From: Octopus sinensis
Lineage: Eukaryota
Direction of reading: 5' to 3'
Length of the DNA: 64,000 nucleotides
Assembly: GCF_006345805.1 (NCBI RefSeq)
Contig: NC_043004.1
Coordinates: forward strand, 6,138,001 to 6,202,000
Both the position numbers and the translations under genes were made by a program. The notes below the pieces were generated by a model. That model searched no databases and had not been told where the DNA came from. It worked only from the letters and a program-made list of their open reading frames with translations. This document shows positions 2,453-61,656 of the stretch, piece by piece; position 1 is the first letter of the stretch; every line of letters begins with the position of its first letter.

Positions 2453-3700
2453 ATAATAGTGGTTTCAAATTTAATAATACATACATATATACATACAACC
2501 ACACTAATAAAAATTGTAACACACTACTGACTCTACAATTAGTGTGGTTTGAAAATAAAACTGTGTTTAACAGCAGGTGTCACAGACAAATTCTATCTCT
2601 TCCTATGTCTGAGGAACCATGTTACATTGCCATTTGGGATTTGTAGTGACAGCAGATTAAAAATCCCTTGACCATGCATTTACTATATTAACCACAATAC
2701 CACAGGTGTGTCTTTGTCAAATGTTAGACTAGAAAATTAAACTACATGTGAAACAAAATCATACATGGTATTATTAAAGGCTAAAAACATCAGTTCAAAT
2801 ACAAATAATTCCTTTTGGAATGGAGAAACTCAGAGCAGATAACGCTATAAATAACAGCATGTAAATATTGGGTTAAAAAAAAACACTGATGCAAAAAATC
2901 AATGGCTGCCTGTGGGACCTGAACCAATATTTTCTGATTTACTGATATTTGCTGGTAAGAATAACAGATAGTGAAACTCAAAGGATTGCTTTGGTCCAAT
3001 GGTTGAATGTCTTATGTTTACAGATGACATAGGTTTGGATCCCAGGGACAGCGTTTGATTTTTTCTATCCAAAAGGTTTTTTATTTGACAAAATATTAGT
3101 GTTATTATTTATAGCTTTATCTGCTTCAGGTTTCACCATTCCCCATCCAAAAAAACTAAAAAACTTCATGTTCTCTCAAAGTTTATGAATTCTTATGATG
3201 CCAACAACAAATACTAAATCTAATTATTTTTTGGTTTTATTAAACAAGAAAAATCCATACAACATGACAGAAATATGGACTTGGTTACCTCATCTTAATG
3301 TTGTGGTACACACTAGCTATAAACAGAGAGAGAAAGGAGATAACTACTAAAAAAAAAAAAAGACAAACTAACAGACATGATAAACAAGGCAGGGGAATAT
3401 TGTATAAGACATGGGTGACATTGAATTATGATGCATCAGACAAGGAAAGGAATGAGGTGGAAGATAACATGGATTTAACTATGTAACAGCAAAATTATAT
3501 ACAATGGGTTTCTACAATGCTCATCTACTAAATTCACTTACAAGGAATTGGGTTGTAGTAGAAGACATTTGCTTAAGGTGCCAGGCAGCGAAACTGAACT
3601 CAAAGCCACATGGCTGTAAAGTGAGCCTCTTACCTACACAGCCATGTCTTCGTTAAACAGAGGATGCTGTTTGAAAGTTAAGTATCATGGCCAAAAGTAA

Positions 3701-4020
3701 AGAGGTGCATGGCTTAGTGGTTAGGGCATGCAGTTGACGGTCATAAGGTTGTGAGTTTGATTCCTGGCAGTGTGATGTGTTTTTGAGCAAGACACTATTT
3801 CACGCAGTTCTTGTCCACTTAGCTAGTAAAAATGAGTTGTACCTGTAATTCAAAGGACCAGCTTTGTCACACCCTGTGTTACACTGGATCTCCCCCAGAA
3901 CTACGTTCAGGTTACATGTGCCTGTGGGGTGCTTGGCTACTTGTATGCTAATTTGATGAGCAGGCTGTCTCACTGACTGGTTCAACTGGAACCCATGTCA
4001 TTGGAACCGATGGAGTGCCA
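3701..4020 (+). mobile_element. tRNA-derived SINE family E
   Basis: gcatggcttagtggttaggg...gagtttgattcctgg head plus gtgtttttgagcaagacact core; relics at about 7100-7280 (-), 11560-11760 (-) and 46215-46345 (+). Confidence 0.7.
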
Positions 4021-4662
4021 GTTTTATTGTGGCCAAAGACATATTGGCAGTGTCCAATAATGAGATGTGAAGCATTCAAACCAAAACTTTTTGAAGTGGA
4101 TCAAATGTCCTCAAAACATCTCACATGCCGTGATATAGATAGCTACAGTCTTGGAGATGAGTTTAATATGTTATGAAAGACCAGAGAAATACCGCAATAA
4201 ATGAAAAAAAAGAAAATTGAAAACACAGAAAGGAAAAGAAACCGATGCTGGTATCATTATATCAAGTAATAAAAGTACATTTTACAAAGCAATGACCAAC
4301 TCAATACTATCACCAATGAAGTGTTATCAACCAGAAAAGAACAACAACAAACATAAGTGAAAATGTCCTGTAGTAAGTCTCCTTAGCAAGAATATTGTTT
4401 TTACATTTTTTAACTGTCCAGAAAAGGAAGAGAAAGAATCAAGAATCCAATATCAAAGCAAAATGTGATAATTCATAAGCAAAGATAGAAGCAATTTTTG
4501 AAGAAATATTCAAGGCAGATATACATGTAAATCTGATAATAAAATTTGTTTATTATTTTTCTAGTTTACCTCACTTTTTCCATGCTATCACTGATGGCAT
4601 AGCATTTAAGCGTTTATTGTAGCAAATAATTTTTTCAGCTAAATCACTTTTCTCACGTTTAA

Positions 4663-4874
4663 CACTTAGCATTTAAACCAGGCCCAAATATTCTACTCAT
4701 TTTCTGTTCAAACTGACTAGATATAGCCTCTCATACCTAACCCACACAATGTTTTTCTGAAAATAAATGATCACACCATCAAAACCTTGAAGCGATGAAA
4801 TAATACTGGATTGATTCAAAACAACATGAATCAACAAGCATTAGATTCAACAGAATTATTTCAACGTTAAAGGG
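4663..4874. mobile_element. TTAA-flanked MITE (second family)
   Basis: ttaa|CACTTAGCATTT ... AACGTTAAAGGG|ttag; the internal sequence recurs at about 61080-61250. Confidence 0.5.
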
Positions 4875-5170
4875 TTAGACACTTCACTATGAAGTAGAAG
4901 GGGAATTACCACCAGTCAAGTAAACAGATGCAAGCAGAGTTATGCAACTTATTCAAGGTACACCACTGAATGTTGCAAAATATGAATGCATATTTATAAT
5001 AAATGCAACAACTTTATGTTGTGAAGTGTATTTGCCACCTAAATGTGATGATGCTAGTGTTGTTTATAGCCCCAGGAAGATATCTCCTCCAGCTGGCTTA
5101 TAACATACTGTCTGATTTCGATTAGTATTTGCGAAGGGAAATCATCGTTCCCATCTCTAGCCTTACATGA

Positions 5171-5220
5171 TACACACAGACCCGGGTTTCTGGGTAGTAA
5201 GCCATCATCAGAGTGTGATA
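5171..5220 (-). ncRNA. Minimal type I hammerhead ribozyme motif (Penelope-like-element type)
   Basis: Minus strand: tatcacact CTGATGA tgg cttactac cca GAAA cccggg TC tgtgtgta. Both core segments are intact; helix II UGG/CCA; helix III is the palindrome ACCCGGGU; GUC cleavage triplet; helix I CACAC/GUGUG. Confidence 0.7.
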
Positions 5221-5514
5221 ATCACCAGCAAGTGATAAGAACTCATTCCAAATGCAAAATACTACATGCTTTTTTTCCAGTGACAAACTGTCGCTGATCT
5301 CAAAAAAGGAGAAACATGCAATATTAAATCTCTGGGTAAACTTTTGTGTTGCAGCAATGTGAATCACTGAATGACTGTATCAAAATCAGTGGCAATGAGG
5401 CCTACAAATCAAACAAGTGCACATAGACACACCATGAACACAGACAGACATGCATATGAATTTAAGAGCAATGTTCTTGAAGCCTTTTTTAAATTCATTT
5501 TATTTTGAGTGGTA

Positions 5515-5880
5515 GTGTTTTATCATTGGGCTGCAGCCATGATGGGGCACAACCTTAAAGGGTTTCATCAAATCAACCCCAGTATTTTTTTTTTTAGTTT
5601 TAAATTCTGTAACTTATTTTATTGATTTCTTTTGCTGAACTGCCAAGTTAAAGGGATGTAAACAAACTAACACCGGTTGTCAAGAAGTGGGAGCTCAAAT
5701 TCAACGACACACATTTATACAATAAGCTTCCACACAGTTTCCATCAATCAAATTCACTCACAAGTCATTGGTTGACCAAGCTATAATAGAAGGTACTTAA
5801 CCAAGGTACTGTGAAGTGGGATTGAACCTGAAACCACATGGTTACAAAGCTAGCTTCTTAACCATACGGCCATGCTTGCA
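5515..5880 (-). mobile_element. SINE family A, older copy
   Basis: Diverged match across tail, core and head; limits approximate. Confidence 0.7.
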
Positions 5881-8480
5881 TCAAATTAGATTTTAATCAA
5901 CACATCTACTGCCATAACAGTTTCAGAGAAATAAGAAGAAAGTTTTGTGAGGTTTGACCAATCTGGTACGAATTTAATGTAAGAAGACATTATTTTGGAC
6001 GATAAAATAGTTTTGAAACCTGTAAAATACTAAAGTACCAACCTGTGATATTGTAAAATTAAATTGTTTTGTTTGATCCAGGTGATATAAGAAGGCAAAC
6101 TGATACATGTAGCTTAAGTAGCACAATTAACCAAAAGCACATGAAGCAGAAATGAAAGGCAACTGTTTAGCAAGATTAAAAATGTGAAAATATCAAAAGG
6201 CAGAAAGGAAGACCTTCAAGCAAGTGAAATCATTTTTCAAAATTTTTATAATTAAACAATTAACAAGAATATTTCCTTGTTATATGGGCAAAAAGCAGAA
6301 AGAAAATTTAGCCGGAATTGGAAATATGTCTCCCATTCTAGGAAGTGTAAAACTGTAAACTCACTCTCCCATGTCTTTGTTCCCATGTTTAGGCTTTAGT
6401 AGAAGTTTTCTATCTTTTGCTTTCTTTCGTTCTATGTCCCAAAGTCTTTTTCTGTGACAGAAAACAAGAACCGTGCCAAATCTCAGATAAAATCTTCCTT
6501 TCCAATAACTAAACTAAGAAAAAACTTATCGGTATGCTGTGTGTGTGTGTGTGTGTATATTTCTGATTTATTTTCAAAATGTTTCGTGGAAGACAACTTG
6601 AGCCAAATTTCTATTATTTTCTTTATAAAGGATGAAATGAAAAGACAATTATCCAATCAAATTCTCTGTTAACATTTGTGACGAGTTGAGGATTTCACTT
6701 GATTTCTATAACATTGATAATGCATGACAAGAAACATGCAATTAAGACTGTGCAAACCTTTAATTCTAAATTAATTAAAATCGTTAACAGTAATATAACT
6801 TATTAACTCTTGTTTAGAAGATATATCAAAATTAATAACTGACATTTTAAATGTTGTTAACCAGCAATTGCAAATACAAAAAGCAGAAAAATAAAATATC
6901 TCACAGTATTAAATATGTTAAAAAAATGATGAATCTTTAGATGATACATTCAGAAGCTGAGACTAACACAAATGATAGACTCTCCTGACATAGATGATAC
7001 ATGAAGGTCCTGCAATTCTTTGCTGAACATCCAGCACCAATGATTTGTTTAAAGTGATGAAATGTTTTTGTTGTACTTTAGCTCACTCTCTCCCATTAAA
7101 TTGACACTGCCTGTGTAGGGGGCTCATGTTTCACTGTACAGGTGCACAGGTGTCAGAGCAGAGCAAAGTGAAACAAAGAGTTCTGCTCAAGAGCACGACA
7201 CATTGCCTTATCCAGGAATCAAAACAATGATTTGGCGATCATGAGTGCAAAATCCTAACCACCAGGCCATGCTCCTTCACAAATATATATTCCTAGTAAT
7301 GAATTTATGAATGAAAGTTAAAGCAGCGAGGGGAGTGAACTGTTAGAGAGTTAAATGAAATAAGTAACAAAGTTGTGTCATGAAAATGATTGGTTACCGA
7401 CTTAGTACTAGTTATTGCTATCAATAAATATATGAACACCATTTAGTACATACAGCCACATTGCCAATAATGAAGACAACAATGGAAAGCTTGCGAAGAG
7501 ACAATGAAGATGTTGACAACAGTACAAACGAGTATTTGATGATTTACCAGAATGAATTAGTGGAGTGATGATTGTGATGGATGATTGACCTGATGGCTGA
7601 AATGATTTGATGGACAATATGATACAATATACACATGGTGTAATTCCAAAAGAGGTAAAGACAATAAAATAAAATAAATGAATTACAGATGAGCACTTGA
7701 ATATATGAATTCAGTTAAAATTTTATCAACATCAATGTTGGAGCTCTTTCTAAGAAATCTTTTTCTTTAGGGGTTTCTAGAATGTCTACCATGTGTTTCT
7801 TAGTTTTGGAATAAGCACACTGCAATGACAAAGACTGGGAATAGGGACTGCATTTGGCTGAAAACTATCCAACCCATGCTGACATACAAAATTGGACACA
7901 AAGTGGCAAAGATATTTGAATGACATATCAGAATGTACAAAAGAAAGAATGTCAAAACAGTTATTTTTGGTGGGATGATCATCATTATCATCATTTAATG
8001 TCCATGCTCCATGCTGGCATGGGTGGGATGGTTTTACAGGATCTGATGGGCCCAAGGATAGCATCATGCACCAGTGTCTGCTTTGGCATGGTTTCTAAGG
8101 TTGGTGGCCATTCCTAACACCAGCGACATTTTTCATGCCACCAGAAATAGGGAGGATGTCATTGCAGTGTGCAAGACTATGAAACCCAAAAGACAATTCT
8201 ATGCAAGGAGTTGAGGAACAGAAAATGGGGCAAAATCCTAACCTTCAATGTTAACACAGATCTCAAAAGGAGAGGGGCACAAGTATATTATGAAAGTAGC
8301 AGAATAAGCTCAATGCTGAGTTTAATTAGTGGATATTGTGAGGCAGGTGGAGGTGGGGGTACAAGTAATTTTCCACTGGTAGAAGTGAGATGATAAGATG
8401 AATAGATCAACAGAAAAATGTTAAAACAAAAAAGGAAAAACAAACGTGTAAATGAAATACAAAACAACAAGTAAACTTAC

Positions 8481-8613: not shown

Positions 8614-8711
8614 CTGCAGATGAATCATAAAAAAAGAAATATTTCATTTTAAACATCCTCAGCAGATTTGATAGATTGAAATTGAAAGAAATCCGTTGTA
8701 TATATATATAT

Positions 8712-8900
8712 ATATATTTTTGCCATGATAGATTGCTAGCCTCTACACATTCTTTATTTTCTCTCTTTGTTTCTTTCTGTGGAAGAGCGTAGACTCGAAA
8801 CATTAAAGACTTTATCACTTCCCGAGCATTAAACTAATACATCTGTTTGTTGTCTACACCACCTGTCTTCGTCTTTTGTTTTTTTGTGAATTCTCCCTAT
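8712..8900 (+). mobile_element. Short repeat of probable Penelope-like origin carrying a variant hammerhead-like motif (8772-8809)
   Basis: tcttt ctgtggaa gag cgtaga ctc gaaa cat t aaaga: helix I UCUUU/AAAGA, helix II GAG/CUC, GAAAC. The surrounding ~190 bp resembles a repeat I recall from octopus genomes. Confidence 0.45.
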
Positions 8901-9726
8901 ATATATGTGTGTGTGTGTACCTTGATCAATAGCATAATTTTCCTTTAATGGCAAAATATGCACCTAATTCAATAAAATTATAAAGGTTACTCTGATTACT
9001 ATGCATAATATGCCCCTGCTTTTCAATCTCAGTATTTAAGCTATGCATAGCACTGCAGTAGTACACATGCTGTGTACATTACTACAACACTGTTTTCTTT
9101 ATGTGCTATAACGGCAGAAATATATCTGCCTTGAACTCAGCTGCGCACCTGTGTTTCACTTATTTTTTTGTTTTACTATATAAAGGTCACCAACTGCCTA
9201 CTCTGAGTAATCACTGATGGCACGTGCCTGGTGTACATACATACACACACATATGTATCTGTTTTTCCATACAATGGCTAGATAGGTTTGTAATACAGTG
9301 AATAGCTACTTGTCTCTCAATTCTGCATCATCTCAATTGTGTAGCTCAACACTACAATTTGATCTCACTTCCTATTCCTTTCCTTCCCAGTCTTCTTTTT
9401 TGTCAGATAACTCCCACTGAGAGCATTAAGTACATTTTTCATCCAACAGTTCTCATCCATTTGCATCACATATTAAACAGATGAAGGTTGAACATTATTT
9501 ATCTTTCTAGGAAAAATGCTTCATTTTGATAATTAAAAAAAATATTTCTTAAAGGTAATACACTCATTAAATAATGTAAGGCACATATCAGGTGTGAGTT
9601 ATATTTGTTGGGGAAGGAGGTATAACAAGACGATGTGATCTCTACACATAACTGTCAAAGTAATTTTTCATAAATCTGTGTGAATAGTCTGACAATTTGG
9701 CTAGTTTTCAATATTTTATTATTAGG

Positions 9727-17032: not shown

Positions 17033-17239
17033 CAAGGGGGTGCTGAAAAGTTCCTGATTTTGGGTAAAAGAAAATACAGGAGGATCAATTTTATTCAACA
17101 TATTCCCCTTTCAGAATCACACACTTATTGCAGCAGTCCTTCAGTTTTTCTAAGCCCTGTAAAAGAACTTGGAAGGTTGGGTATCCAACCAAGCCTTTCA
17201 CGATAACCTTCAAGCCAGGAACTTTTCAGAACCCCCTCA
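17033..17239. mobile_element. mariner-type MITE
   Basis: TIRs caagggggtgctgaaaagttcctg / caggaacttttcagaaccccctca, followed by TA. Confidence 0.8.
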
Positions 17240-17242
17240 TAT

Positions 17243-17545
17243 ATCATCATCATCGTCGTTTAACGTCCGTTCTCCATGCTAGCATGGGTTGGACGGTTCG
17301 ACCGGGGATCTGGGAAGCCAGAAGGCTGCACCAGGCTCCGGTCTTATCTGGCAACGTTTCTACAGCTGGATGCCCTTCCTAACGCCAACCACTTCGTGAG
17401 TGTAGTGGGTGCTTTTTACGTGCCACCTGCACTGGTGCCAGGCGAGGCTGGCATTGGCCACGGTCGGATTGGTGCATTTTATGGAAGCCAGTCGAGGCGG
17501 CACTGGCTTCGGCTACGATTCGGATGGTGCTTTTTACGTGCCATC
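17243..17545 (-). mobile_element. SINE-like family C with (GAT)n tail
   Basis: (atc)n gtttaacgtcc...catgctagcatgggttggacgg...ggatgcccttcctaacgccaaccac; same family recurs more than ten times in the window. Confidence 0.8.
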
Positions 17546-19543: not shown

Positions 19544-20206
19544 TTAAAAGGAACTGTTCTTTATTAGCTTTCCATCAACCTTAACTAGAGGACCAACACC
19601 AAGGCTACTAAATGCCACCCACACCATCACATCCTCACCCTCTGCTTGAGCTGTCTTTTTCATGCATTTTGGATGGAATTCCTCGGTTTGGCGACGTCTG
19701 ACATATGTTTTACTATCTGATCCAAATATACAGAAGCATGACACGTCATTCCAAAGGACCCTGCACCAATCTTCGGCAGTTCATTGAGCATGGTTTTTTG
19801 CGAAATTAAGGCGTTTGAGTCGAATTCTTTCGGATATTATTGGCTTTTTCCTAGCGATTTGTCCATGTAATCCAAATTCTCTCAAACGGTTACGGACAGT
19901 GTGTGGTGCAAAAATAATACCATTCTCATTGGACAATTGTTTACAAATGTCAACAGCTGTCAGCATTCGGTTGCCTTCCAGAAGTCGGTGGATTCGACGG
20001 TCCAACTGCGCCGTCGTTTTTCTTGGGACGCCAGTCCTTTGCCGATCTTTATGTTGACCAGTCTCTGAGTATAACTTCCATGCTTGCACACAAGCCATTT
20101 TACTGCACTTTAGTTGCTTGCTGATGTTCGAAAAAGAAACTTTTTGCTGGTGGAGTAATACAATTTTTGCTCTCGTGACTGGACTGAGGGTACGTTGTTT
20201 TCCCAT
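19544..20206 (-). mobile_element. Tc1/mariner transposase pseudogene fragment
   Basis: MGKQRTLSPVTRAKIV...GVPRKTT...RKKPII...NFAKNHAQ*TAEDWCRVLWNDVSCF...VMVWVAFSSLGVGPLVKVDG: HTH region and the first catalytic Asp of DDE. One in-frame TGA at 19781; truncated before the second Asp; TIRs not identified. Confidence 0.9.
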
Positions 20207-20514
20207 TATTAATCAATTTTATAATAATGTTAAATTATAACACTATATAGTGCAGTTAGGCTAGTTGTGTGACCACCCATTTTGGCAAAATAATTTGCAT
20301 ACATATTACATGGTCTTAAACTAATTTTGCTGGTAAATTTGAAATGTTTATATCAATTTAGAATTAGAATTCTTCAAGTTTTATAAAAATAGTTACTGTC
20401 TGCATCACTCAAAAGAGAAATAAATTTTGCATAAGGTGTAAAAGATAAAAATAATTTGTATGGTGTTAGCAACAAAATATTTAGTAAGAAATAGAACTTT
20501 TATCATATACATAT

Positions 20515-25816: not shown

Positions 25817-26532
25817 CTGAAAATAGATATAAATAAATAAAATAAAATGTTTCTTACAGAAACTCATTATTTAAGGTCTGTTATCCACGCTGACATGGGT
25901 TGGATCTAGGAAGTTAACGGACTGTAATAAGTTCCAATGTCAGTTTTGGTATGGTTTCTACAGAATGCCCTTCCTAATGCCAACCAATTTACAGTGAGTA
26001 CTGGGTGCTTGTTTTCATGCAACAGTCACTAGTGAGGTTGCCAAGTAACATGCAAGACAAGAACAGAACAAGAAAAGGGATAAACCACCTTGTCTAAATG
26101 GGTGGAATATGTGAGTTTCCATCAATCAAATCCATTCATAAATCTTTAGTCAGCCCAGGGCTATAGTAGAACACACTTGCCAAAAGTACTGTGCATAGTT
26201 GGGAAGCAAGCTTCTGAACTACACAGCCTTACCAGAGCCTATAAAATCTAACATCATTGGGGTCTCCTTGCAAGGGCAGCGTGTCTTGTTAGTAAATATA
26301 AACTAGTTTACCAACATTGCCACAAAAGATTTGTTAACCAACTTTTTATATTTATAGTGGAAGAAAGCAACAGGAAACTTTTGGGGGAAAAGTTTACTAT
26401 TTCCCTTGTTTAGACTGTGATTTAAAAAAATACAAAATAAAAAACAAGCAAAATTTTTCTATATAAATTCCAGAGAGAGATGAAGGGAATACTATTTCAA
26501 TAATAACTGAAATAAACAAAGTTAATACTCAC

Positions 26533-32574: not shown

Positions 32575-32963
32575 TCTATTTATCTTTTACTGGTTTCAGT
32601 CATTGGATTGCAGTCATGCTGGGGCACTGCTTTGAAGGGTTTAGGCAAACAAATCAAACTTAGTACTTCTTCCCTTTTTAAATCTGGTAGTTATTCTATC
32701 AGTGTCCTTTGTTGAATTGCTAAGTTATGGGGGACCTAAACAAACAACACTGGTTATTAAAGGAACAAACACTGACACACAGACACACGCGCATATATAT
32801 GATGTGCTTCCACATAGTTTCTGTGTACCAAATTTACTGACAAGGCACTGGTCCGATCAGGGCTATAATAGAAGACATTTGCCTGAAGTGCCACGCAGTG
32901 GACTGAGCCCAAAACCACACGCTTGCAGAGTGAGCTTCTTAGCCACACAGCCACACCTGCACT
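32575..32963 (-). mobile_element. SINE family A
   Basis: Same head, core and tail; ends about 80 bp from the donor at 33043. Confidence 0.8.
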
Positions 32964-33136: not shown

Positions 33137-35939
33137 CTTCAGAGAGAAAATAAAATGAGAGGATATAAAATTTGTATTTTAAAAAATTAGAACTATACCA
33201 GTAGATAATCATGATAATATTAGTATTTTCAATTGAATGTTAAAGAAAAAAAAAAAGAAAGAAAAAACCCCAAATTAAATGTGTTAGTTTGACATTCATC
33301 CTGTAAATATTATAGTCATTAACAGAACCCACAGAAGTTCTGTAGTTATTTTGAAAAGTATAAGATTGTTAGAATCATGAAATACAAAATTTCTTTTGAA
33401 ATGGTATCTTTTCATAGGTGTTTCATTCTTAAGAGAGTGTCAAGCTCACATAGTTAGTACTGAAGATGCAGTCTTTGGAGCAAATGCCTTTGAAAACTAT
33501 ATTGTTTGTTATGAACTTCTTGCCACTTCTACCTTGAGAGTTGTTATAATCTTTACATAAAGTAAAAAAAAAAGAAAAAAATTTAACTATGGAATAAAAA
33601 AGCAGGCAGCAGACATTATCTGTGACATTATTTTGCTATTGTATGGCTATATTGGCAAAACTAAGAGATCTTAATACATTCTACTACATTCTTGGTCTCA
33701 AACCAAGAAGTGCATATGGCTGGACTTGAACCCACAGTCACCTCACTGAGCTGTGATTAAAAATATTCATCAGTCAACTGCCTTATGAATCACATAAATG
33801 AAATGTATACACTAGATTATGCCTAATTTTATTCCATAGCTAAAGCATTACATATATAGACAATAATAGCAGAAATAACAAACAAACAAAACTATAAAAA
33901 AAAATTTAATTTTTTCTAAGGCCTAACCTAAAAAAAGGTTTCTATTGCTAGGGGATTAAAAGCAATGCCTTGCATGAAGAAATCGTCAAAGAAAACTAAT
34001 CTGTAAAAGTTCTTCTAAAATCTTTGAAGAAATGTATTTGACATGACCTTATATTTATTTTGTCAGAGTACAAGATTATAAATTGTATCCTAAGTTTATA
34101 AATACAGCAGAAACAAAGAGATAGATAACATTAAGGAAAATCTGCATAAATCCAAGATAAATACTATGTGATGCTTATTAACTTCATTTTCCTTTTTAGC
34201 TGACCTTTTCTAATTGTTTCTTGTTGTTTGAAGATAAGATATTTCTAGGTTCTAAATACCCAACACATGATGTGGAAAAATAAATGTAAAAATATGAATA
34301 ATAATGATTTTCTTTTGAGGAATACTAGGCCAATAATTAGGAGGGACGGGGCACAACTGGTTACATTAACATGAGTGTATAATTAGTACTTACTGGTTCC
34401 AGGAAAAAGCTGAAGTTCATTCAGGTAGGATTCAGAATATAAGATGAAGCCAAACATAGTAAGGCTTTTTTACTACCATTTTTTATTAATAATATTAATG
34501 ATATTTAATGTTAAACAGTAGTTCAAAGAGTCTAAGGATGCTTCACACAGCATAAAGATATAAAGATGGTATCTTAGTTTTGAGCAATACTATTTGTTAT
34601 ATAGCCTATGTAAGACCTGCTCAAACAGACCCATGGCACATAGAAAACTATTTAGGAACAACTCACAGACCCAGCACTCCAGATATACCCTATCTGCATT
34701 TTTGTGTCAAGCATGTTGATCTGTGCGGATAGCATTAACTTTTCTAACATTCAGAGTTCTTATCAGGACTGTTCCATCACCTTTGGATACACTGGCACAA
34801 AATTAAGCTTTTTGGTTGCTTAATGTAATTCTAAGGACACAGACAAAAAAAAATTCTAGTTGAACATCAATGGTGAATGATATATTTATAGGTCATACTG
34901 TGAGATAGAGAGAAATAATGATGTTAATTATAAAATGTCTTGATGCACAACATGTATATTAAGATATATATTGTGATACATCTTCTATCTTTTGTTTTCT
35001 ATTTTCACTTCTGCCTCTATTTTAGATTTCTCATACCAATTTGAATTTAATGTTTTTGGAAGTTGTTTCTGAATGTTAGATATTAGGTAGTTGATTAAAT
35101 GGATAATTAGTATGATTAAACACAAATCAATTGAATATATATACGCACGAGGGAGTGCATACTAAGGTGAGATACAAACCCATAAAAGTTTAACTAGGTA
35201 GAAAGGGAAGACATATTGTTAATGTACAATGAAGTTATGAGTAAAGAACTGTTATGATACACAACTTGAAAAGACAATGATAGATGAAGATGAGGCTTTA
35301 GTTAGGGGAAAAAAAGTATGTTAAGTACAATGAGATGTTATAAACACAAGTAAAATACTCTGTATTTTTGAGATTGCCTAGGTCAGTGTAAATAGGGAAA
35401 TACTAGTACATATTAGGATCATCAAAATAGGCAAAGTCAGAGAAGCATTGATGCTGTCTCCTTAATTGGTAGCAGCCATCTTATAAGTTACTGAAGCTGT
35501 CTCTAGCAAAGGAAAACTATGTGAATGGGTGCTGTACCTGCTGTCGGCTCCAGATGAGGATGGCTGTTGCTGTGTTCTAAAAAACGAAAAGGTAATGAAA
35601 AAGGTAGAAAAATACTGTCAAGACAACACTGCGGCACAATGGAGACAGATACACACAAAACTGTGGGTCCCAATATATTTTTCATATCTCTGTGAGAACC
35701 CCTTTTGGCTTCTTAAGGGTTTTGGTAACTTTTCTAGAAACTGAAAACCTTATTTGACCTCAATTATTAAATTAAATTGAGAAAATACAGTTTACAGACA
35801 TTGCCACCACTAATAAAACATAGTTTTATAAACCTAAGACTCCAGGGACCTCTAATGGGCAGTCCTACCTCACATCTTTTTTACTTGTTGGTTCTGGAGA
35901 AGAGGCAGTGCTCACAGCTTCTACATGCTTCCCCCAGAA

Positions 35940-41519: not shown

Positions 41520-42904
41520 GAATGTTTGTTACTACTATTGAAATACATAGCCTAGGTTTCAATTCTTTTAAAAATGAAGAATTTAGTAAAATAACTTTGC
41601 TATTCTTAAGGTGCTGTTTGAGACATAAATTAACCTGAAATTTTTATGGAAGAATGTATTTTAGATCTTAGTTAGTTAGTTAGTTAATTTGGCTCAAAAG
41701 CAAATAGCAAGGCCATGTAGGGGGACATGGAGTTAAGTACAGGGTGGTGTTCATGTAAAGAGTTCAGGCCACTTGAGGTCCAGGGAGGCTTTGAACAAAG
41801 CGGTCGTCGGCATCTTCACCATCTTGTCTGGCAGCTTGTTCCACGGATCCGCAACCTGGACGGAGAAAGCTCCTCTCCTTCGATTGAGATGAAATCGTCG
41901 CAGGTAGAGCTTTTCGGAATGACCCCGCAGCCAACGCTCTGGAGCCGGAGTGAAGAACAGCTCTTTCGAGAGGTTACACTTTCCGCTTATGATGTTGTGG
42001 GCGAGAATGAGATCACCACGGCGGCGGCGTTTTTCAAGAGAATAAAGGTCGAGCGTCCTCAGCCTTTCTTTGTAGGACAAATTTTTGAGACCATGAACCA
42101 TGCGGGTAGCCAGCTTCTGGACTCTTTCGAGATGCTGAATGTCTTTGAGGAGATAAGGAGAAGAGGCTTGAATCCCATACTCCAATATGGGTCTCACCAG
42201 CGTGACATAGAGTGGTAGGAATATGGCTGCTGTGAGCATTCCGAATGACCGTCAAATCAAGAACAGAATTCCGCGTGCTTTGTTGGCAGCATGGATGCAC
42301 TGGGCCGAAGGCGAAAAGGAGGAATCCACCAAGATACCCAGGTCCTTTACCTGATCGGTCCTCTCCAGCAGCAGACGACCTGGCTCGAAATCAAGTTGAG
42401 TTGCAGGAGTAGAGCCAACAGGCAGATGACAGCACTTTGACACGTTCAGACACAGGTCCCAATCGTTAGACCACTTTCAAATTTGGTGGAGGCATCGATG
42501 AAGATCCTCTATATTACCGCGAGGAGCGACCAGTTTGATATCGTCGGCAAATAGAAGGGTGTGTTGCGTGAGGTCGTCGGGCAAGTCATTTATGAAGACT
42601 AAGAACAACAAGGGCCCAAGCACTGAACCTTGAGGCACGCCACTGCTCGCACTGGAGACGTCGGACCGCGAACCATTAACTTGGACTTGGAAGGAGCGAT
42701 CTGAGAGGAAGGCACCAACCCATCGTATAATATCCGGATGGAAACTATATGCTTGAAGCTTGACAAGTAATAGGCGGTGGTTTACCGAGTCAAAAGCTTT
42801 GGCAAAGTCCAATAAAACGATGTCAACAGCATCACTATCATCTTATAAAATAAGAAGATTGTATCAGGACCAAGGGCATCTTGGGTGGGTTAGCATCAGA
42901 AGGG
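41520..42904. mobile_element. piggyBac-type MITE interrupted by the CR1 LINE
   Basis: 41540-41665 aligns with the 38330 copy; the sequence resumes at 42846 and ends in ...cagaaggg|ttaa. Left limit approximate. Confidence 0.55.
41671..42839 (-). mobile_element. 5'-truncated CR1-clade non-LTR retrotransposon (RT C-terminal half plus 3' UTR)
   Basis: One frame from DFAKAFDSV through SGVPQGSVLGPLLF and LFADDIKL to ...LDLKWPELFT* with only two in-frame TGAs (42477, 42252) and no frameshift; (TAAC)n tail at 41671-41686; candidate 6-bp TSD ATCTTA at 41665-41670 and 42840-42845. Confidence 0.93.
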
Positions 42905-46712: not shown

Positions 46713-47954
46713 CTGCAAATGAATGAAGTATTTTAATTAGAGAAATAGCAACTTTATATTTACAAAAGAAGTCAGAAAATATGATGTTAAGTGAATGGGT
46801 AAAAATATTAAACCTGAAATATTTCAGACTGTGTTGTATCTAGATCAGACATTTTCCTTCCAGACTGTCCATAATTTGAGAATAACAGACTGATACCTGC
46901 TTCATACTAGTCATAAAGGATTGATTAACTTTCCAAGTAATTGCTTATTTTTCTTCTAAGAAATTAAAATGAAGTTGTTATTGATATTTCCCTTTTTGTT
47001 TTTTTCCTCCAAAAAATCTCGCTGCATATATTTAGTTGGCTTCCTCTGGTCCATTAACTGGTTTGACTGGCAACAAAAAAGGTAGGTTTTGATTGACTTA
47101 CAATTGCCAAGACACACCTACATGCTGTTATGATCCATGTGGTTAGTCAGTAAAGAAATATAACGATGTTTATTGTTTTGTTTTTAAAGTGGTGACTGTA
47201 AATAAAATTTTTTTTTTAAAATTTACTTGTAACTATTGATATCACTATGGTAACATCAACAGTTATATGCAATCAATAAATTGACCAATGACACTTAAAA
47301 TTTACAACAGGATAACTGAGAAAAGGTAATGTTTTGTTTATATTTTTATCTATTTTACTGTAAACAAATACTGCATTTGACAGCAAGCTCTTCTTTCAAC
47401 TGCAACTTACCTGTAACACAAACCTTGAGCTTTGTTTAGAAACTGAAAACAGGCTTTGGGGGAGTTTGTTGTTTTTTTTTAATATAGGTGCACCTTATCA
47501 AATGCAGTATTGTTTGCTAAGGATCACTTAAGATAAGCACAGATTGCTGTGAAATGTGTCTAACATGTCAGGCCATGCCTTTTATCTCAAAATGAGGAAA
47601 AAAGGAAAAAGTGGGGCAAATAAATTTTATGGACAATTTTGCCAGCAAAAACTACGAGTAGTTATATTGATTTCCAATTTTTACTATCTATAATAAACCT
47701 GTGTTATGTGTCACCTTTCTTAAATGCTATCAGTTTCATCTCTAGTTTTAGGTATTTTGCCTAGTGTTAAGTATTTGTTGGAAAAAAGACATTCCCTACA
47801 GATGACTCAAACTCTAAAGAAATGTTCACTTGCTGACATTTTTGTCCAGATATAAGCCGTTTTGATACTCGAGGATAGCAGTACCCAACTGGGGCTCCCA
47901 GGGTCGCATGCAACCCTCAAGTATCCTTCTAGTGGGCCCCAACAGTTTTCATTC

Positions 47955-55930: not shown

Positions 55931-56297
55931 ACTCTCTTTTACTTGTTTCAGTCATTTGACTGTGGCCATGCTGGAGCACCACTTTAGTCGAGCACATCAA
56001 CCCCAGGACTTATTCTTTGGACGCCTAGTACTTATTCTATCAGTCTCTTTGCCAAACTGCTAAGTTACGGGGACGTAAACACACCAGTATCAGTTGTCAA
56101 GCGATGTTGTGGGACACACACACAAACACATACATATATACAACGGGCTTCTTTCAGTTTCTGTCTACCAAATCCACTCACAAGGCTTTGGTCGGCTCGA
56201 GGCTATAGTAGAACACTTGCCCAAGGTACCATGCAGTGGGACTGAACCCGGAACCATGTGGTTCGTAAGCAAGCTACCTACCACACAGCCACTCCTG
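55931..56297 (-). mobile_element. SINE family A
   Basis: Little-diverged full-length copy. Confidence 0.9.
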
Positions 56298-61259: not shown

Positions 61260-61656
61260 TCTTTTATCTTTTACTTGTTTCAGTCATTGAACTATGGTCA
61301 TGCTGGAGCACTGCCTTGTAGGGTTTAATCAAATAAATCAACCCCAGTACTTATCTTTTTTTTTAAAGTCTGGCACTTATTAGAAGTCTGGTCTCTTTTG
61401 CTGAACAGTTAAGTTATGGGAATGTAAGCAAACCAGCACCAGTTGTCAAGCAGCAGAGAGGGAGTACACAAGAAAGCGTGTGCACGCACACACACTGTTT
61501 CCACAGAGTTTTTGTTGACTAAATCCACTCACAAAGCATTGGTTGGCCTGGGGCTGTAGTAGAAGACACATGCTCAAGGTGCCTTGCTGTGGGACTAGAC
61601 TCAAAACCACATGGTTGCAAAATGAACTTCTTACCAAAACAGCCTTGCCTGTGCCT
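61260..61656 (-). mobile_element. SINE family A
   Basis: Diverged full-length copy. Confidence 0.8.

What the first reader, a model, noticed from the sequence alone, without database searches (positions are those of the whole stretch)
5171..5220. Intact minimal hammerhead ribozyme motif on the TRAK transcript strand
Seen: the minus strand reads tatcacact-CUGAUGA-ugg cuuacuac cca-GAAA-cccggg-UC-ugugugua. All conserved core bases (C3-A9, G12-A15, U16.1, C17) are present. Helix II has 3 bp with an 8-nt loop and helix I is CACAC/GUGUG. Helix III is a loop-less 8-nt palindrome (ACCCGGGU). The predicted cut is after GUC, between plus-strand 5179 and 5178. Known: minimal type I hammerheads with a palindromic helix III typify Penelope-like elements and self-cleave mainly as dimers. 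Inference: it lies about 3.3 kb 3' of the last TRAK exon found and in sense, so it may sit in the last intron or 3' UTR and affect 3'-end formation or stability. Caveats: U10.1-A11.1 replaces the usual G-C pair, there is a U-U pair at the base of helix I, and I found no second copy in the window for cis-dimerisation.
Basis: partly seen in the sequence, partly recalled or inferred. Interest (0 to 1): 0.75.

Follow-up and report, generated by a model that had tools for sequence, protein, structure and literature searches.

The report
Lone hammerhead-like motif in octopus TRAK1 intron
A 50-base stretch inside an intron of the octopus TRAK1 gene spells out every core base of a hammerhead self-cutting RNA, but it lacks the features that real transposon-borne hammerheads share and has no partner copy, so it is most likely a chance or dead motif and not a working ribozyme.

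Summary
The motif is on the minus strand at 5220..5171, letter for letter as described, with the predicted cut at 5179|5178. The gene is TRAK1 of Octopus vulgaris/sinensis, also on the minus strand.

The motif therefore sits 1.15 kb into an internal intron, not in the last intron or 3' UTR.

I fetched six real Penelope-like element (PLE) loci as a yardstick. All carry a hammerhead just after the ORF, with four shared traits:
- a bulged A after A9;
- a G10.1-C11.1 pair;
- a 4-7 bp helix II;
- a 4-nt palindromic helix III.

The candidate has none of these. A covariance model built from five of the loci gives it 6.1 bits. Members score 46-63 bits, and a decayed PLE hammerhead at 8771-8810 (+) scores 22.

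Other negatives:
- No second copy, tandem repeat or PLE coding remnant was found.
- CCCGGG occurs only once in the window.
- Every optional stem sits at the minimum length.
- Folding shows no preference for the hammerhead shape.

Chance expectation is about 2-7e-5 per window, which means 1-3 per 2.7 Gb genome.

Verdict: probably a fortuitous, inactive motif (~0.6). A relic of a non-canonical hammerhead repeat is ~0.28, and a working ribozyme ~0.05. Orthologue conservation and copy number could not be tested.

The parts
5171..5220 (-). Whole hammerhead-like motif (type I topology, helix I open)
   Evidence: Read directly. Only strict descriptor hit in the window.
5213..5217 (-). Helix I 5' strand, CACAC (positions 2.6-2.2). 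U2.1 at 5212 faces U1.1 at 5178, a U.U mismatch.
5205..5211 (-). Core box CUGAUGA (C3-A9)
   Evidence: One of 13 CTGATGA sites in the window.
5191..5204 (-). Helix II: UGG/CCA, 3 bp, closed by U10.1-A11.1, with an 8-nt loop CUUACUAC. No bulged base after A9.
   Evidence: Contrast with the real PLE hammerheads.
5188..5190 (-). Core G12 A13 A14
5180..5187 (-). Helix III segment ACCCGGGU, an 8-nt perfect palindrome (A15.1 to U16.1). It holds the only CCCGGG in the window.
5179..5179 (-). C17. The predicted scissile bond lies between 5179 and 5178.
   Evidence: inference from hammerhead numbering; cleavage not shown
5173..5177 (-). Helix I 3' strand, GUGUG (1.2-1.6)
6364..6452 (-). TRAK1 exon encoding KRLWDIERKKAKDRKLLLKPKHGNKDMGE. 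Its donor GTGAGT starts the intron that holds the motif.
   Evidence: tblastn of Octopus TRAK1 proteins, 100% identity; splice sites read
5516..5880 (-). tRNA-derived SINE copy just upstream of the motif on the transcript. It bounds the 640-bp stretch (4877-5515) that is unique within the window.
   Evidence: blastn self-hits to more than 15 places in the window; sequence read

Best explanation
The sequence is a solitary hammerhead-like motif in neutral intronic DNA of TRAK1. Most likely it is a fortuitous match to the short hammerhead core and does nothing.

Mechanistic reasoning (inferred, not shown):
- As a monomer, helix III is at best 2 bp with a CCGG loop, so the active fold is unstable.
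- Activity would need a second RNA with the same ACCCGGGU palindrome to form a double hammerhead. None exists on the pre-mRNA within the window.
- A single-copy intron is too dilute and short-lived for bimolecular pairing.
- U10.1-A11.1 replaces the near-invariant G10.1-C11.1.
- Helix II is only 3 bp, and the 1.1-2.1 pair is a U.U mismatch.
- No loop-loop tertiary contacts are apparent.

Any self-cleavage is therefore expected to be negligible, and the intron should be spliced out and degraded as usual.
For: 1. Every non-obligatory feature sits exactly at the detection threshold, which is the signature of a chance hit. Helix II is 3 bp. Helix I is 5 bp with a mismatch at its base and mismatches beyond.
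2. Chance expectation is 2-7e-5 per window, or about 1-3 per 2.7 Gb genome.
3. There is no thermodynamic signal.
   - The 50-mer MFE of -9.3 kcal/mol is not the hammerhead fold, and z = 0.11 against shuffles.
   - The hammerhead fold is -4.5 kcal/mol.
   - In 110-250 nt contexts the CUGAUGA box is sequestered.
   - The homodimer gain of -9.1 is no better than shuffles at -7.9 +/- 3.3.
4. It fails the PLE membership test.
   - Six independent real PLE loci and one octopus relic all show a bulged A, G10.1-C11.1 and a 4-nt palindrome.
   - The candidate shows none of these.
   - On model R1 it scores 6.1 bits. Members score 45.6-63 bits and diverged or decayed ones 22-23 bits.
5. No second copy, tandem array or partner was found.
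   - blastn and nhmmer of 4877-5515 against the rest of the window find nothing.
   - TRF and the repeat finder find nothing.
   - CCCGGG is unique in the window.
6. No PLE coding remnant was found.
   - Pfam on 149 stop-free segments of 60 aa or more gives no further RT or GIY-YIG hit.
   - A PLE bait tblastn gives only noise.
7. A review notes that relaxed minimal-motif searches give mostly false positives (PMC6155905).
Against: - For this one window the chance probability is small (about 5e-5).
- PLEs make up 6.83% of the O. vulgaris genome in 190 families (PMC13282606 supplement), so hammerhead-bearing repeats are abundant. A non-canonical family cannot be excluded.
- The 8-nt perfect palindrome placed exactly at helix III, together with all 13 core bases, is what dimer-type animal hammerheads look like.
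- The double-hammerhead fold (-25.9 kcal/mol) lies within 1.8 kcal/mol of the dimer MFE.
- My PLE reference set is small (six loci) and none of it is from a cephalopod.
- Orthologue conservation and genomic copy number could not be tested.
Confidence: 0.6

Rival explanations
1. The motif is a dead relic of a hammerhead-bearing repeat whose ribozyme differs from the canonical PLE min-hammerhead. Candidates are a divergent PLE family, a retrozyme or a satellite-type type I hammerhead. The element would have inserted in sense into the TRAK1 intron, and its partner copy and flanks have since been lost or decayed. It has no present function.
For: - PLEs cover 6.83% of the O. vulgaris genome, with an expansion about 56 Mya.
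- The window holds a separate decayed PLE-type hammerhead at 8771-8810 (+), so such relics do occur in this gene.
- Metazoan type I hammerheads typically have a 1-2 bp helix III capped by a short palindromic loop (PMC4209133), and ACCCGGGU fits that.
- The motif sits in 640 bp bounded by SINE copies, which is typical repeat-rich intron.
Against: - All seven PLE-type hammerheads examined share the bulged A, G10.1-C11.1 and a 4-nt helix III. The candidate differs in all three, and no simple mutational path links them.
- R1 scores it at 6.1 bits.
- Its flanks show no similarity to those of the 8771 relic or to anything else in the window.
- There is no tandem arrangement.
- Neutral decay that spared all 13 core bases and the 8-nt palindrome while removing every family hallmark is improbable.
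Confidence: 0.28
2. The motif is a working, domesticated intronic ribozyme. It would cut TRAK1 pre-mRNA 1,185 nt into the intron, either as a weak monomer (2-bp helix III with a CCGG loop) or as a dimer with another RNA that carries the same palindrome. That would lower or tune TRAK1 output, in analogy with the conserved intronic hammerheads of amniote RECK, CTCL and DTNB.
For: - All core bases are intact.
- The motif is in sense orientation inside a transcribed intron.
- The double-hammerhead fold is energetically accessible.
- Conserved intronic type I hammerheads provide a precedent (PMC6155905).
Against: - No Rfam hammerhead hit, even at E<=10 on 401 bases. This is weak evidence, because Rfam also misses real PLE hammerheads.
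- U10.1-A11.1, a 3-bp helix II, a U.U at 1.1/2.1 and no recognisable loop-loop contacts.
- No partner palindrome anywhere in the 64 kb of the same transcript.
- The MFE and context folds sequester the CUGAUGA box.
- Even genuine PLE min-hammerheads cleave poorly in vitro as dimers (PMC4209133).
- Retrozyme hammerheads are reported to be excluded from introns (bioRxiv 10.64898/2026.07.22.740005 abstract).
Confidence: 0.05
3. The CUGAUGA box is really the C box (UGAUGA) of an intronic box C/D snoRNA on the TRAK1 strand, not a hammerhead core.
For: - CUGAUGA contains UGAUGA.
- cmscan gives weak C/D-type hits nearby (sR51, SNORD74, SNORD52; E = 1-5).
Against: - The two better hits are on the plus strand, antisense to the gene, at 5034-5117. 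All lie far below gathering scores and none covers the motif.
- No CUGA D box with a terminal stem lies 60-120 nt downstream on the minus strand (sequence read).
Confidence: 0.01

Closest known systems
Minimal hammerheads of Penelope-like elements (min-HHR; Cervera & de la Pena 2014, PMC4209133)
   Same: - Type I topology.
- Complete CUGAUGA / GAAA / UH core.
- Short helix I (5 bp).
- No stable intramolecular helix III; instead a palindrome that could pair in a dimer.
   Different: - No unpaired base between A9 and 10.1.
- U-A instead of G10.1-C11.1.
- Helix II is 3 bp, against 4-8 bp.
- Helix III palindrome is 8 nt (ACCCGGGU), against 4 nt (ACGU/AGCU).
- Not next to a PLE ORF or pLTR, and no tandem or inverted partner.
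- Scores 6.1 bits on a model on which members score 46-63 bits.
Canonical metazoan type I hammerheads of satellites and non-LTR retrozymes (newt, Schistosoma, Rfam RF00163 Hammerhead_1)
   Same: - Type I topology.
- Helix III reducible to 1-2 bp capped by a short palindromic loop (CCGG or CCCGGG).
- Dimer-dependent by design.
   Different: - No Rfam hit at any threshold tried.
- No 6-bp helix I or 4-bp helix II with the conserved loop nucleotides that make the tertiary contact.
- Not in a 170-400 bp tandem repeat.
- Single copy in the window.
Conserved intronic hammerheads of amniotes (RECK, CTCL, DTNB; Rfam HH9/HH10)
   Same: Sense orientation inside an intron of a protein-coding gene.
   Different: - Those are full hammerheads with tertiary contacts and deep conservation.
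- Here the stems are minimal.
- Conservation is untested.
- HH9 and HH10 gave no hit.

Membership tests
PLE minimal hammerhead | Conserved core C3-A9, G12-A14, A15.1, U16.1, H17, in type I order | tested here: met
   Read directly at 5211-5179 on the minus strand.
PLE minimal hammerhead | Unpaired nucleotide between A9 and 10.1 | tested here: not met
   A9 is followed directly by the U10.1-A11.1 pair. A bulged A is present in 6 of 6 real PLE loci and in the octopus relic. It is listed as a hallmark in PMC4209133.
PLE minimal hammerhead | G10.1-C11.1 closing pair | tested here: not met
   The candidate has U5204-A5191. G-C is present in 7 of 7 references. PMC4209133 calls it 'highly conserved'.
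PLE minimal hammerhead | Long helix II (4-8 bp) | tested here: not met
   The candidate has 3 bp (UGG/CCA) followed by a C.C mismatch. The references have 4-7 bp.
PLE minimal hammerhead | Palindromic 15.x-16.x segment and no stable monomer helix III | tested here: met
   ACCCGGGU is a perfect palindrome. It is 8 nt long, whereas all seven references have 4 nt (ACGU, AGCU or ACAU).
PLE minimal hammerhead | Lies in a pLTR just 3' of a PLE RT/GIY-YIG ORF, usually with a second copy in tandem or inverted | tested here: not met
   In the references the motif lies 30-170 nt after the ORF stop, and a second copy lies in the inverted or tandem neighbour. Around the candidate there is no RT or GIY-YIG remnant, no second copy and no tandem repeat.
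PLE minimal hammerhead | Scores as a member on a covariance model of real PLE hammerheads | tested here: not met
   The candidate scores 6.1 bits on model R1, below the window's E=10 level. Training members score 45.6-63 bits. An untrained amphioxus PLE scores 22.8 bits, and the octopus relic at 8771-8810 scores 22.2 bits. Caveat: the model rests on only five non-cephalopod sequences.
Canonical type I hammerhead (Rfam Hammerhead_1, HH9, HH10) | Reaches the Rfam gathering score | tested here: not met
   No hammerhead family hit at gathering score on the window, nor at E<=10 on 5000-5400. As a control, Rfam also misses bona fide PLE min-hammerheads, so this excludes only the canonical form.
Canonical type I hammerhead / retrozyme | Tandem repeat units, each with one hammerhead | tested here: not met
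   TRF and the repeat finder show no array in 3500-7000. There is only one motif in the window.
Any self-cleaving hammerhead | Site-specific self-cleavage 3' of H17 | not testable with these tools
   This needs in vitro transcription or end-mapping of octopus RNA.
Domesticated intronic hammerhead | Conservation of core and stems in orthologous introns | not testable with these tools
   The TRAK1 gene range exceeds 100 kb, so no orthologous DNA was served. Other isoforms are not on record. No eukaryotic genome collection can be searched by DNA.

The most novel reading that the evidence does not exclude
An octopod-specific, non-canonical hammerhead (U10.1-A11.1, 8-nt palindromic helix III) has been retained in sense inside a TRAK1 intron. 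It self-cleaves at 5179|5178, perhaps by pairing in trans with other RNAs that carry the same palindrome. This would give cephalopod neurons a ribozyme-based brake on a mitochondrial-transport adaptor.
Probability: 0.04. Interest if true: 0.6.

Novelty: not a real feature. Interest (0 to 1): 0.13.

Why it matters
If the motif were active, it would be the first intronic hammerhead described in a cephalopod gene and a variant that tolerates U10.1-A11.1. As it stands, it mainly shows how a 13-base core plus minimal stems turns up by chance in a large genome. It also shows that a yardstick built from real PLE hammerheads separates such hits from genuine relics; one genuine relic lies 3.6 kb away in the same gene.

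Tried and rejected
Searches that led nowhere:
- Rfam at gathering score and at E<=10 gave no hammerhead. This is uninformative for min-hammerheads, because real ones are also missed.
- A protein-database search with the 81-aa ORF over the motif found nothing. It cannot speak to copy number, because none of ten mechanical ORFs of the window is in the collection.
- Orthologous DNA through TRAK1 proteins could not be obtained. The gene range is too long in Argonauta, and the O. bimaculoides and O. vulgaris isoforms are not on record.
- A metagenome scan for CTGATGA-N8-30-GAAACCCGGGTC gave 118+ hits. None has hammerhead stems beyond chance, and they look like prokaryotic coding DNA.
Lunse et al. 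2017 is not held, and two other papers have no supplements held as text.

Searches inside the window:
- A relaxed search for decayed PLE-type hammerheads using my own descriptor found none, with 0-3 in Markov controls. The covariance model was needed to find the relic at 8771.
- A PLE bait tblastn on the window gave only noise. A GIY-YIG-like match at 26371 does not continue.
- A comparison of the flanks of the 8771 relic and of the candidate was no better than shuffles.

Idea rejected:
- The abundant SINE is not hammerhead-derived. It gave a 13-bit R1 hit at 17292-17345, but five copies support a consensus GAACCGTC rather than GAAACGTC, and there is no CUGAUGA box.

Search devices used:
- The TRAK1 query was made by joining exon translations from the window and repeating part of them to satisfy the length filter.
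- The PLE query was a consensus written from memory as bait. It was validated only by the hits it returned (E ~1e-167, with RVT_1, PF26215, PF28514 and GIY-YIG).

Full report
**1. Observation**

The minus strand of 5220..5171 reads UAUCACACU CUGAUGA UGG CUUACUAC CCA GAAA CCCGGG UC UGUGUGUA, exactly as reported.

In hammerhead numbering:
- C3-A9 = 5211-5205.
- U10.1 = 5204 and A11.1 = 5191.
- G12-A14 = 5190-5188.
- A15.1 = 5187 and U16.1 = 5180.
- C17 = 5179, so the predicted scissile bond is 5179|5178.

The stems are minimal. Helix I is CACAC (5217-5213) paired with GUGUG (5177-5173). It has a U.U at its base and mismatches beyond the fifth pair. Helix II is 3 bp with an 8-nt loop. The helix III segment ACCCGGGU is a perfect 8-nt palindrome.

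A strict descriptor finds this site and no other among the 13 CTGATGA sites of the window, on both strands.

**2. Chance**

- A factorised estimate, taking each component's frequency from the real window, gives about 1e-4 per window.
- A simulation of four million Markov flanks around a planted CTGATGA gives 2-7e-5 per window.
- That corresponds to about 1-3 per 2.7 Gb genome, on both strands.

The motif is therefore not expected in a single window, but it is expected somewhere in a genome scan.

Every optional feature sits at the minimum the descriptor allows. That is how chance hits look.

**3. Where it is**

Pfam finds HAP1_N and Milton pieces on the minus strand, running from 46.7 kb down to 12.7 kb.

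A query made from the window's exon translations finds TRAK1 of O. vulgaris, O. sinensis, O. bimaculoides and Argonauta. tblastn places the exons. Exon identity is highest to the O. vulgaris and O. sinensis proteins (100% over several exons) and lower to O. bimaculoides.

That exon has acceptor cacag| and donor |GTGAGT. The remaining ~242 residues are not encoded in the window.

The motif is therefore in sense, 1,153 nt into an internal intron. It is not in the last intron or the 3' UTR.

It lies in a 640-bp stretch (4877-5515) that is unique within the window. That stretch is bounded by a tRNA-derived SINE (5516-5880) and another SINE fragment (4684-4876).

**4. Folding**

- The 50-mer's MFE (-9.3 kcal/mol) is not the hammerhead fold, and z = 0.11 against shuffles.
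- The hammerhead secondary structure is worth -4.5 kcal/mol, or -2.6 with a 2-bp helix III.
- In 110-250 nt contexts the CUGAUGA box pairs with the upstream UAUCA.
- A homodimer can form the double-hammerhead arrangement at -25.9 kcal/mol, against a dimer MFE of -27.7.
- The dimerisation gain (-9.1) is no better than for shuffled sequences (-7.9 +/- 3.3).

The fold is permitted but not favoured.

**5. Is it a Penelope-type hammerhead?**

The literature gives these hallmarks for PLE min-hammerheads (PMC4209133):
- a long helix II;
- a short helix I;
- an unpaired base between A9 and 10.1;
- a highly conserved G10.1-C11.1 pair;
- palindromic 15.2-16.2 positions.

PLEs are abundant in O. vulgaris. 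They cover 6.83% of the genome in 190 families, so a relic was a serious possibility.

No octopus PLE sequence was within reach, so I built a yardstick.

- A PLE RT/EN consensus written from memory served as bait. It returned thousands of real PLE proteins (best E ~1e-167) carrying RVT_1, PF26215, PF28514 and GIY-YIG.
- Six of their loci were fetched.
- Five of them carry a hammerhead with an exact core 30-170 nt after the ORF stop, and again in the inverted or tandem neighbour.
- The sixth, from amphioxus, has one with a U3 variant.

All six share a bulged A after A9, a G10.1-C11.1 pair, a helix II of 4-7 bp and a 4-nt palindromic helix III (ACGU or AGCU).

Rfam does not detect any of them at E<=1. 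The Rfam negative for the candidate therefore rules out only the canonical form.

I built a covariance model (R1) from five of the loci. Its scores are:

| Sequence | R1 score |
|---|---|
| Training members | 45.6-63 bits |
| Untrained amphioxus PLE | 22.8 bits |
| Window 8771-8810 (+), best hit in the window | 22.2 bits (E ~4e-4, rough) |
| Candidate | 6.1 bits |

The site at 8771-8810 reads CUGUGGA-a-GAG..CUC-GAA-ACAU-U. It is a decayed PLE-type hammerhead with the bulged A, the G-C pair and an ACGU that has decayed to ACAU. It lies between a (TA)9 tract and a (TA)n(TG)n tract.

The candidate is not among the window's hits at E<=10.

The window thus contains a genuine PLE hammerhead relic, and the candidate is not of that kind. 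The flanks of the two show no similarity.

**6. Partner and element context**

- No second copy of the flanks was found by blastn or nhmmer.
- There is no tandem or inverted repeat.
- CCCGGG occurs once in 64 kb.
- No further RT or GIY-YIG remnant appears among 149 stop-free segments.
- The only RT in the window is a LINE fragment at 41.7-42.8 kb.

**7. Weighing the explanations**

*A canonical PLE relic is excluded.* Too many coordinated differences would have to arise while all 13 core bases and the palindrome stayed intact.

*A relic of a non-canonical hammerhead repeat remains possible (about 0.28).* The genome is rich in PLEs, and the palindromic helix III is typical of dimer-type animal hammerheads.

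*A chance match is the best single explanation (about 0.6).* The stems sit at threshold, there is no fold preference, no family and no partner, and about one to three such matches are expected per genome.

*A working intronic ribozyme is unlikely (about 0.05).* The arguments against it are:
- U10.1-A11.1, a 3-bp helix II and a U.U at 1.1/2.1;
- no partner for helix III;
- even genuine PLE min-hammerheads cleave poorly in vitro.

Under all but the last of these, the element has no effect on TRAK1.

**8. What could not be done**

- Orthologous introns could not be fetched.
- Genomic copy number could not be measured. The protein collection holds no ORF calls for this region.
- Cleavage and transcription cannot be tested with these tools.

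These are the decisive next steps.

Noticed in passing
window 8771-8810 (+): A decayed Penelope-type minimal hammerhead reading CUGUGGA-a-GAG..CUC-GAA-ACAU-U. It has the bulged A and the G10.1-C11.1 pair, ACGU has decayed to ACAU, and A6 is mutated. It scores 22.2 bits (E ~4e-4) on the PLE model. It is antisense to TRAK1 and lies between a (TA)9 tract (8700-8717) and a (TA)n(TG)n tract (~8900-8920). It looks like a short 3'-terminal PLE fragment inserted in a TA microsatellite.
   Followed up: partly
The final ~242 codons of TRAK1 lie beyond the window start.
   Followed up: yes
window 17230-17420 (-), with copies at ~24.9, 48.0, 50.5, 50.8, 54.1, 57.6 and 62.9 kb and elsewhere: A high-copy SINE-like repeat with at least 14 copies in the window. 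Its core reads ..AAGACCGGAG..(28 nt)..CCGGTCGAACCGTCCAACCCATGC.., which resembles the helix II and 3' half of PLE hammerheads (13-bit R1 hit, E 0.18). The copies support GAACCGTC rather than GAAACGTC, and there is no CUGAUGA box. This is probably coincidence, but a PLE-tail origin of this SINE was not excluded.
   Followed up: partly
window 5516-5880 (-), with more than 15 further copies (e.g. 389-750, 32600-32961, 55944-56291, 61276-61651): A tRNA-derived SINE with a tRNA-like head (GCAAGCATGGCCGTATGGTTAAGAAGC..GGTTCAATCCCAC) and an A-rich tail. One copy sits immediately upstream of the motif on the transcript.
   Followed up: partly
window 41754-42842 (-) and 19547-20212 (-): A LINE-type reverse-transcriptase fragment (RVT_1, E 2e-18, FADD motif) and a Tc1/mariner transposase N-terminal remnant (HTH_Tnp_Tc3_2, E 5e-19). 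Both lie inside TRAK1 introns.
   Followed up: partly
window 35537-35575 (-) and 46814-46852 (-): A 39-nt cassette exon encoding TQQQPSSSGADSR, present in some annotated TRAK1 isoforms (P0003, P0024) and absent from others. Also an alternative first coding exon (MSDLDTTQSEIFQ) used by isoform P0001.
   Followed up: partly
loci L119, L120, L122, L123, L124 (ENA contigs of unidentified eukaryotes) and L121 (Branchiostoma lanceolatum): Intact PLE copies in tandem or inverted arrangement, each with a min-hammerhead 30-170 nt after the ORF stop. Rfam 15 detects none of these at E<=1, so this ribozyme class seems not to be covered by the current Rfam hammerhead models.
   Followed up: partly
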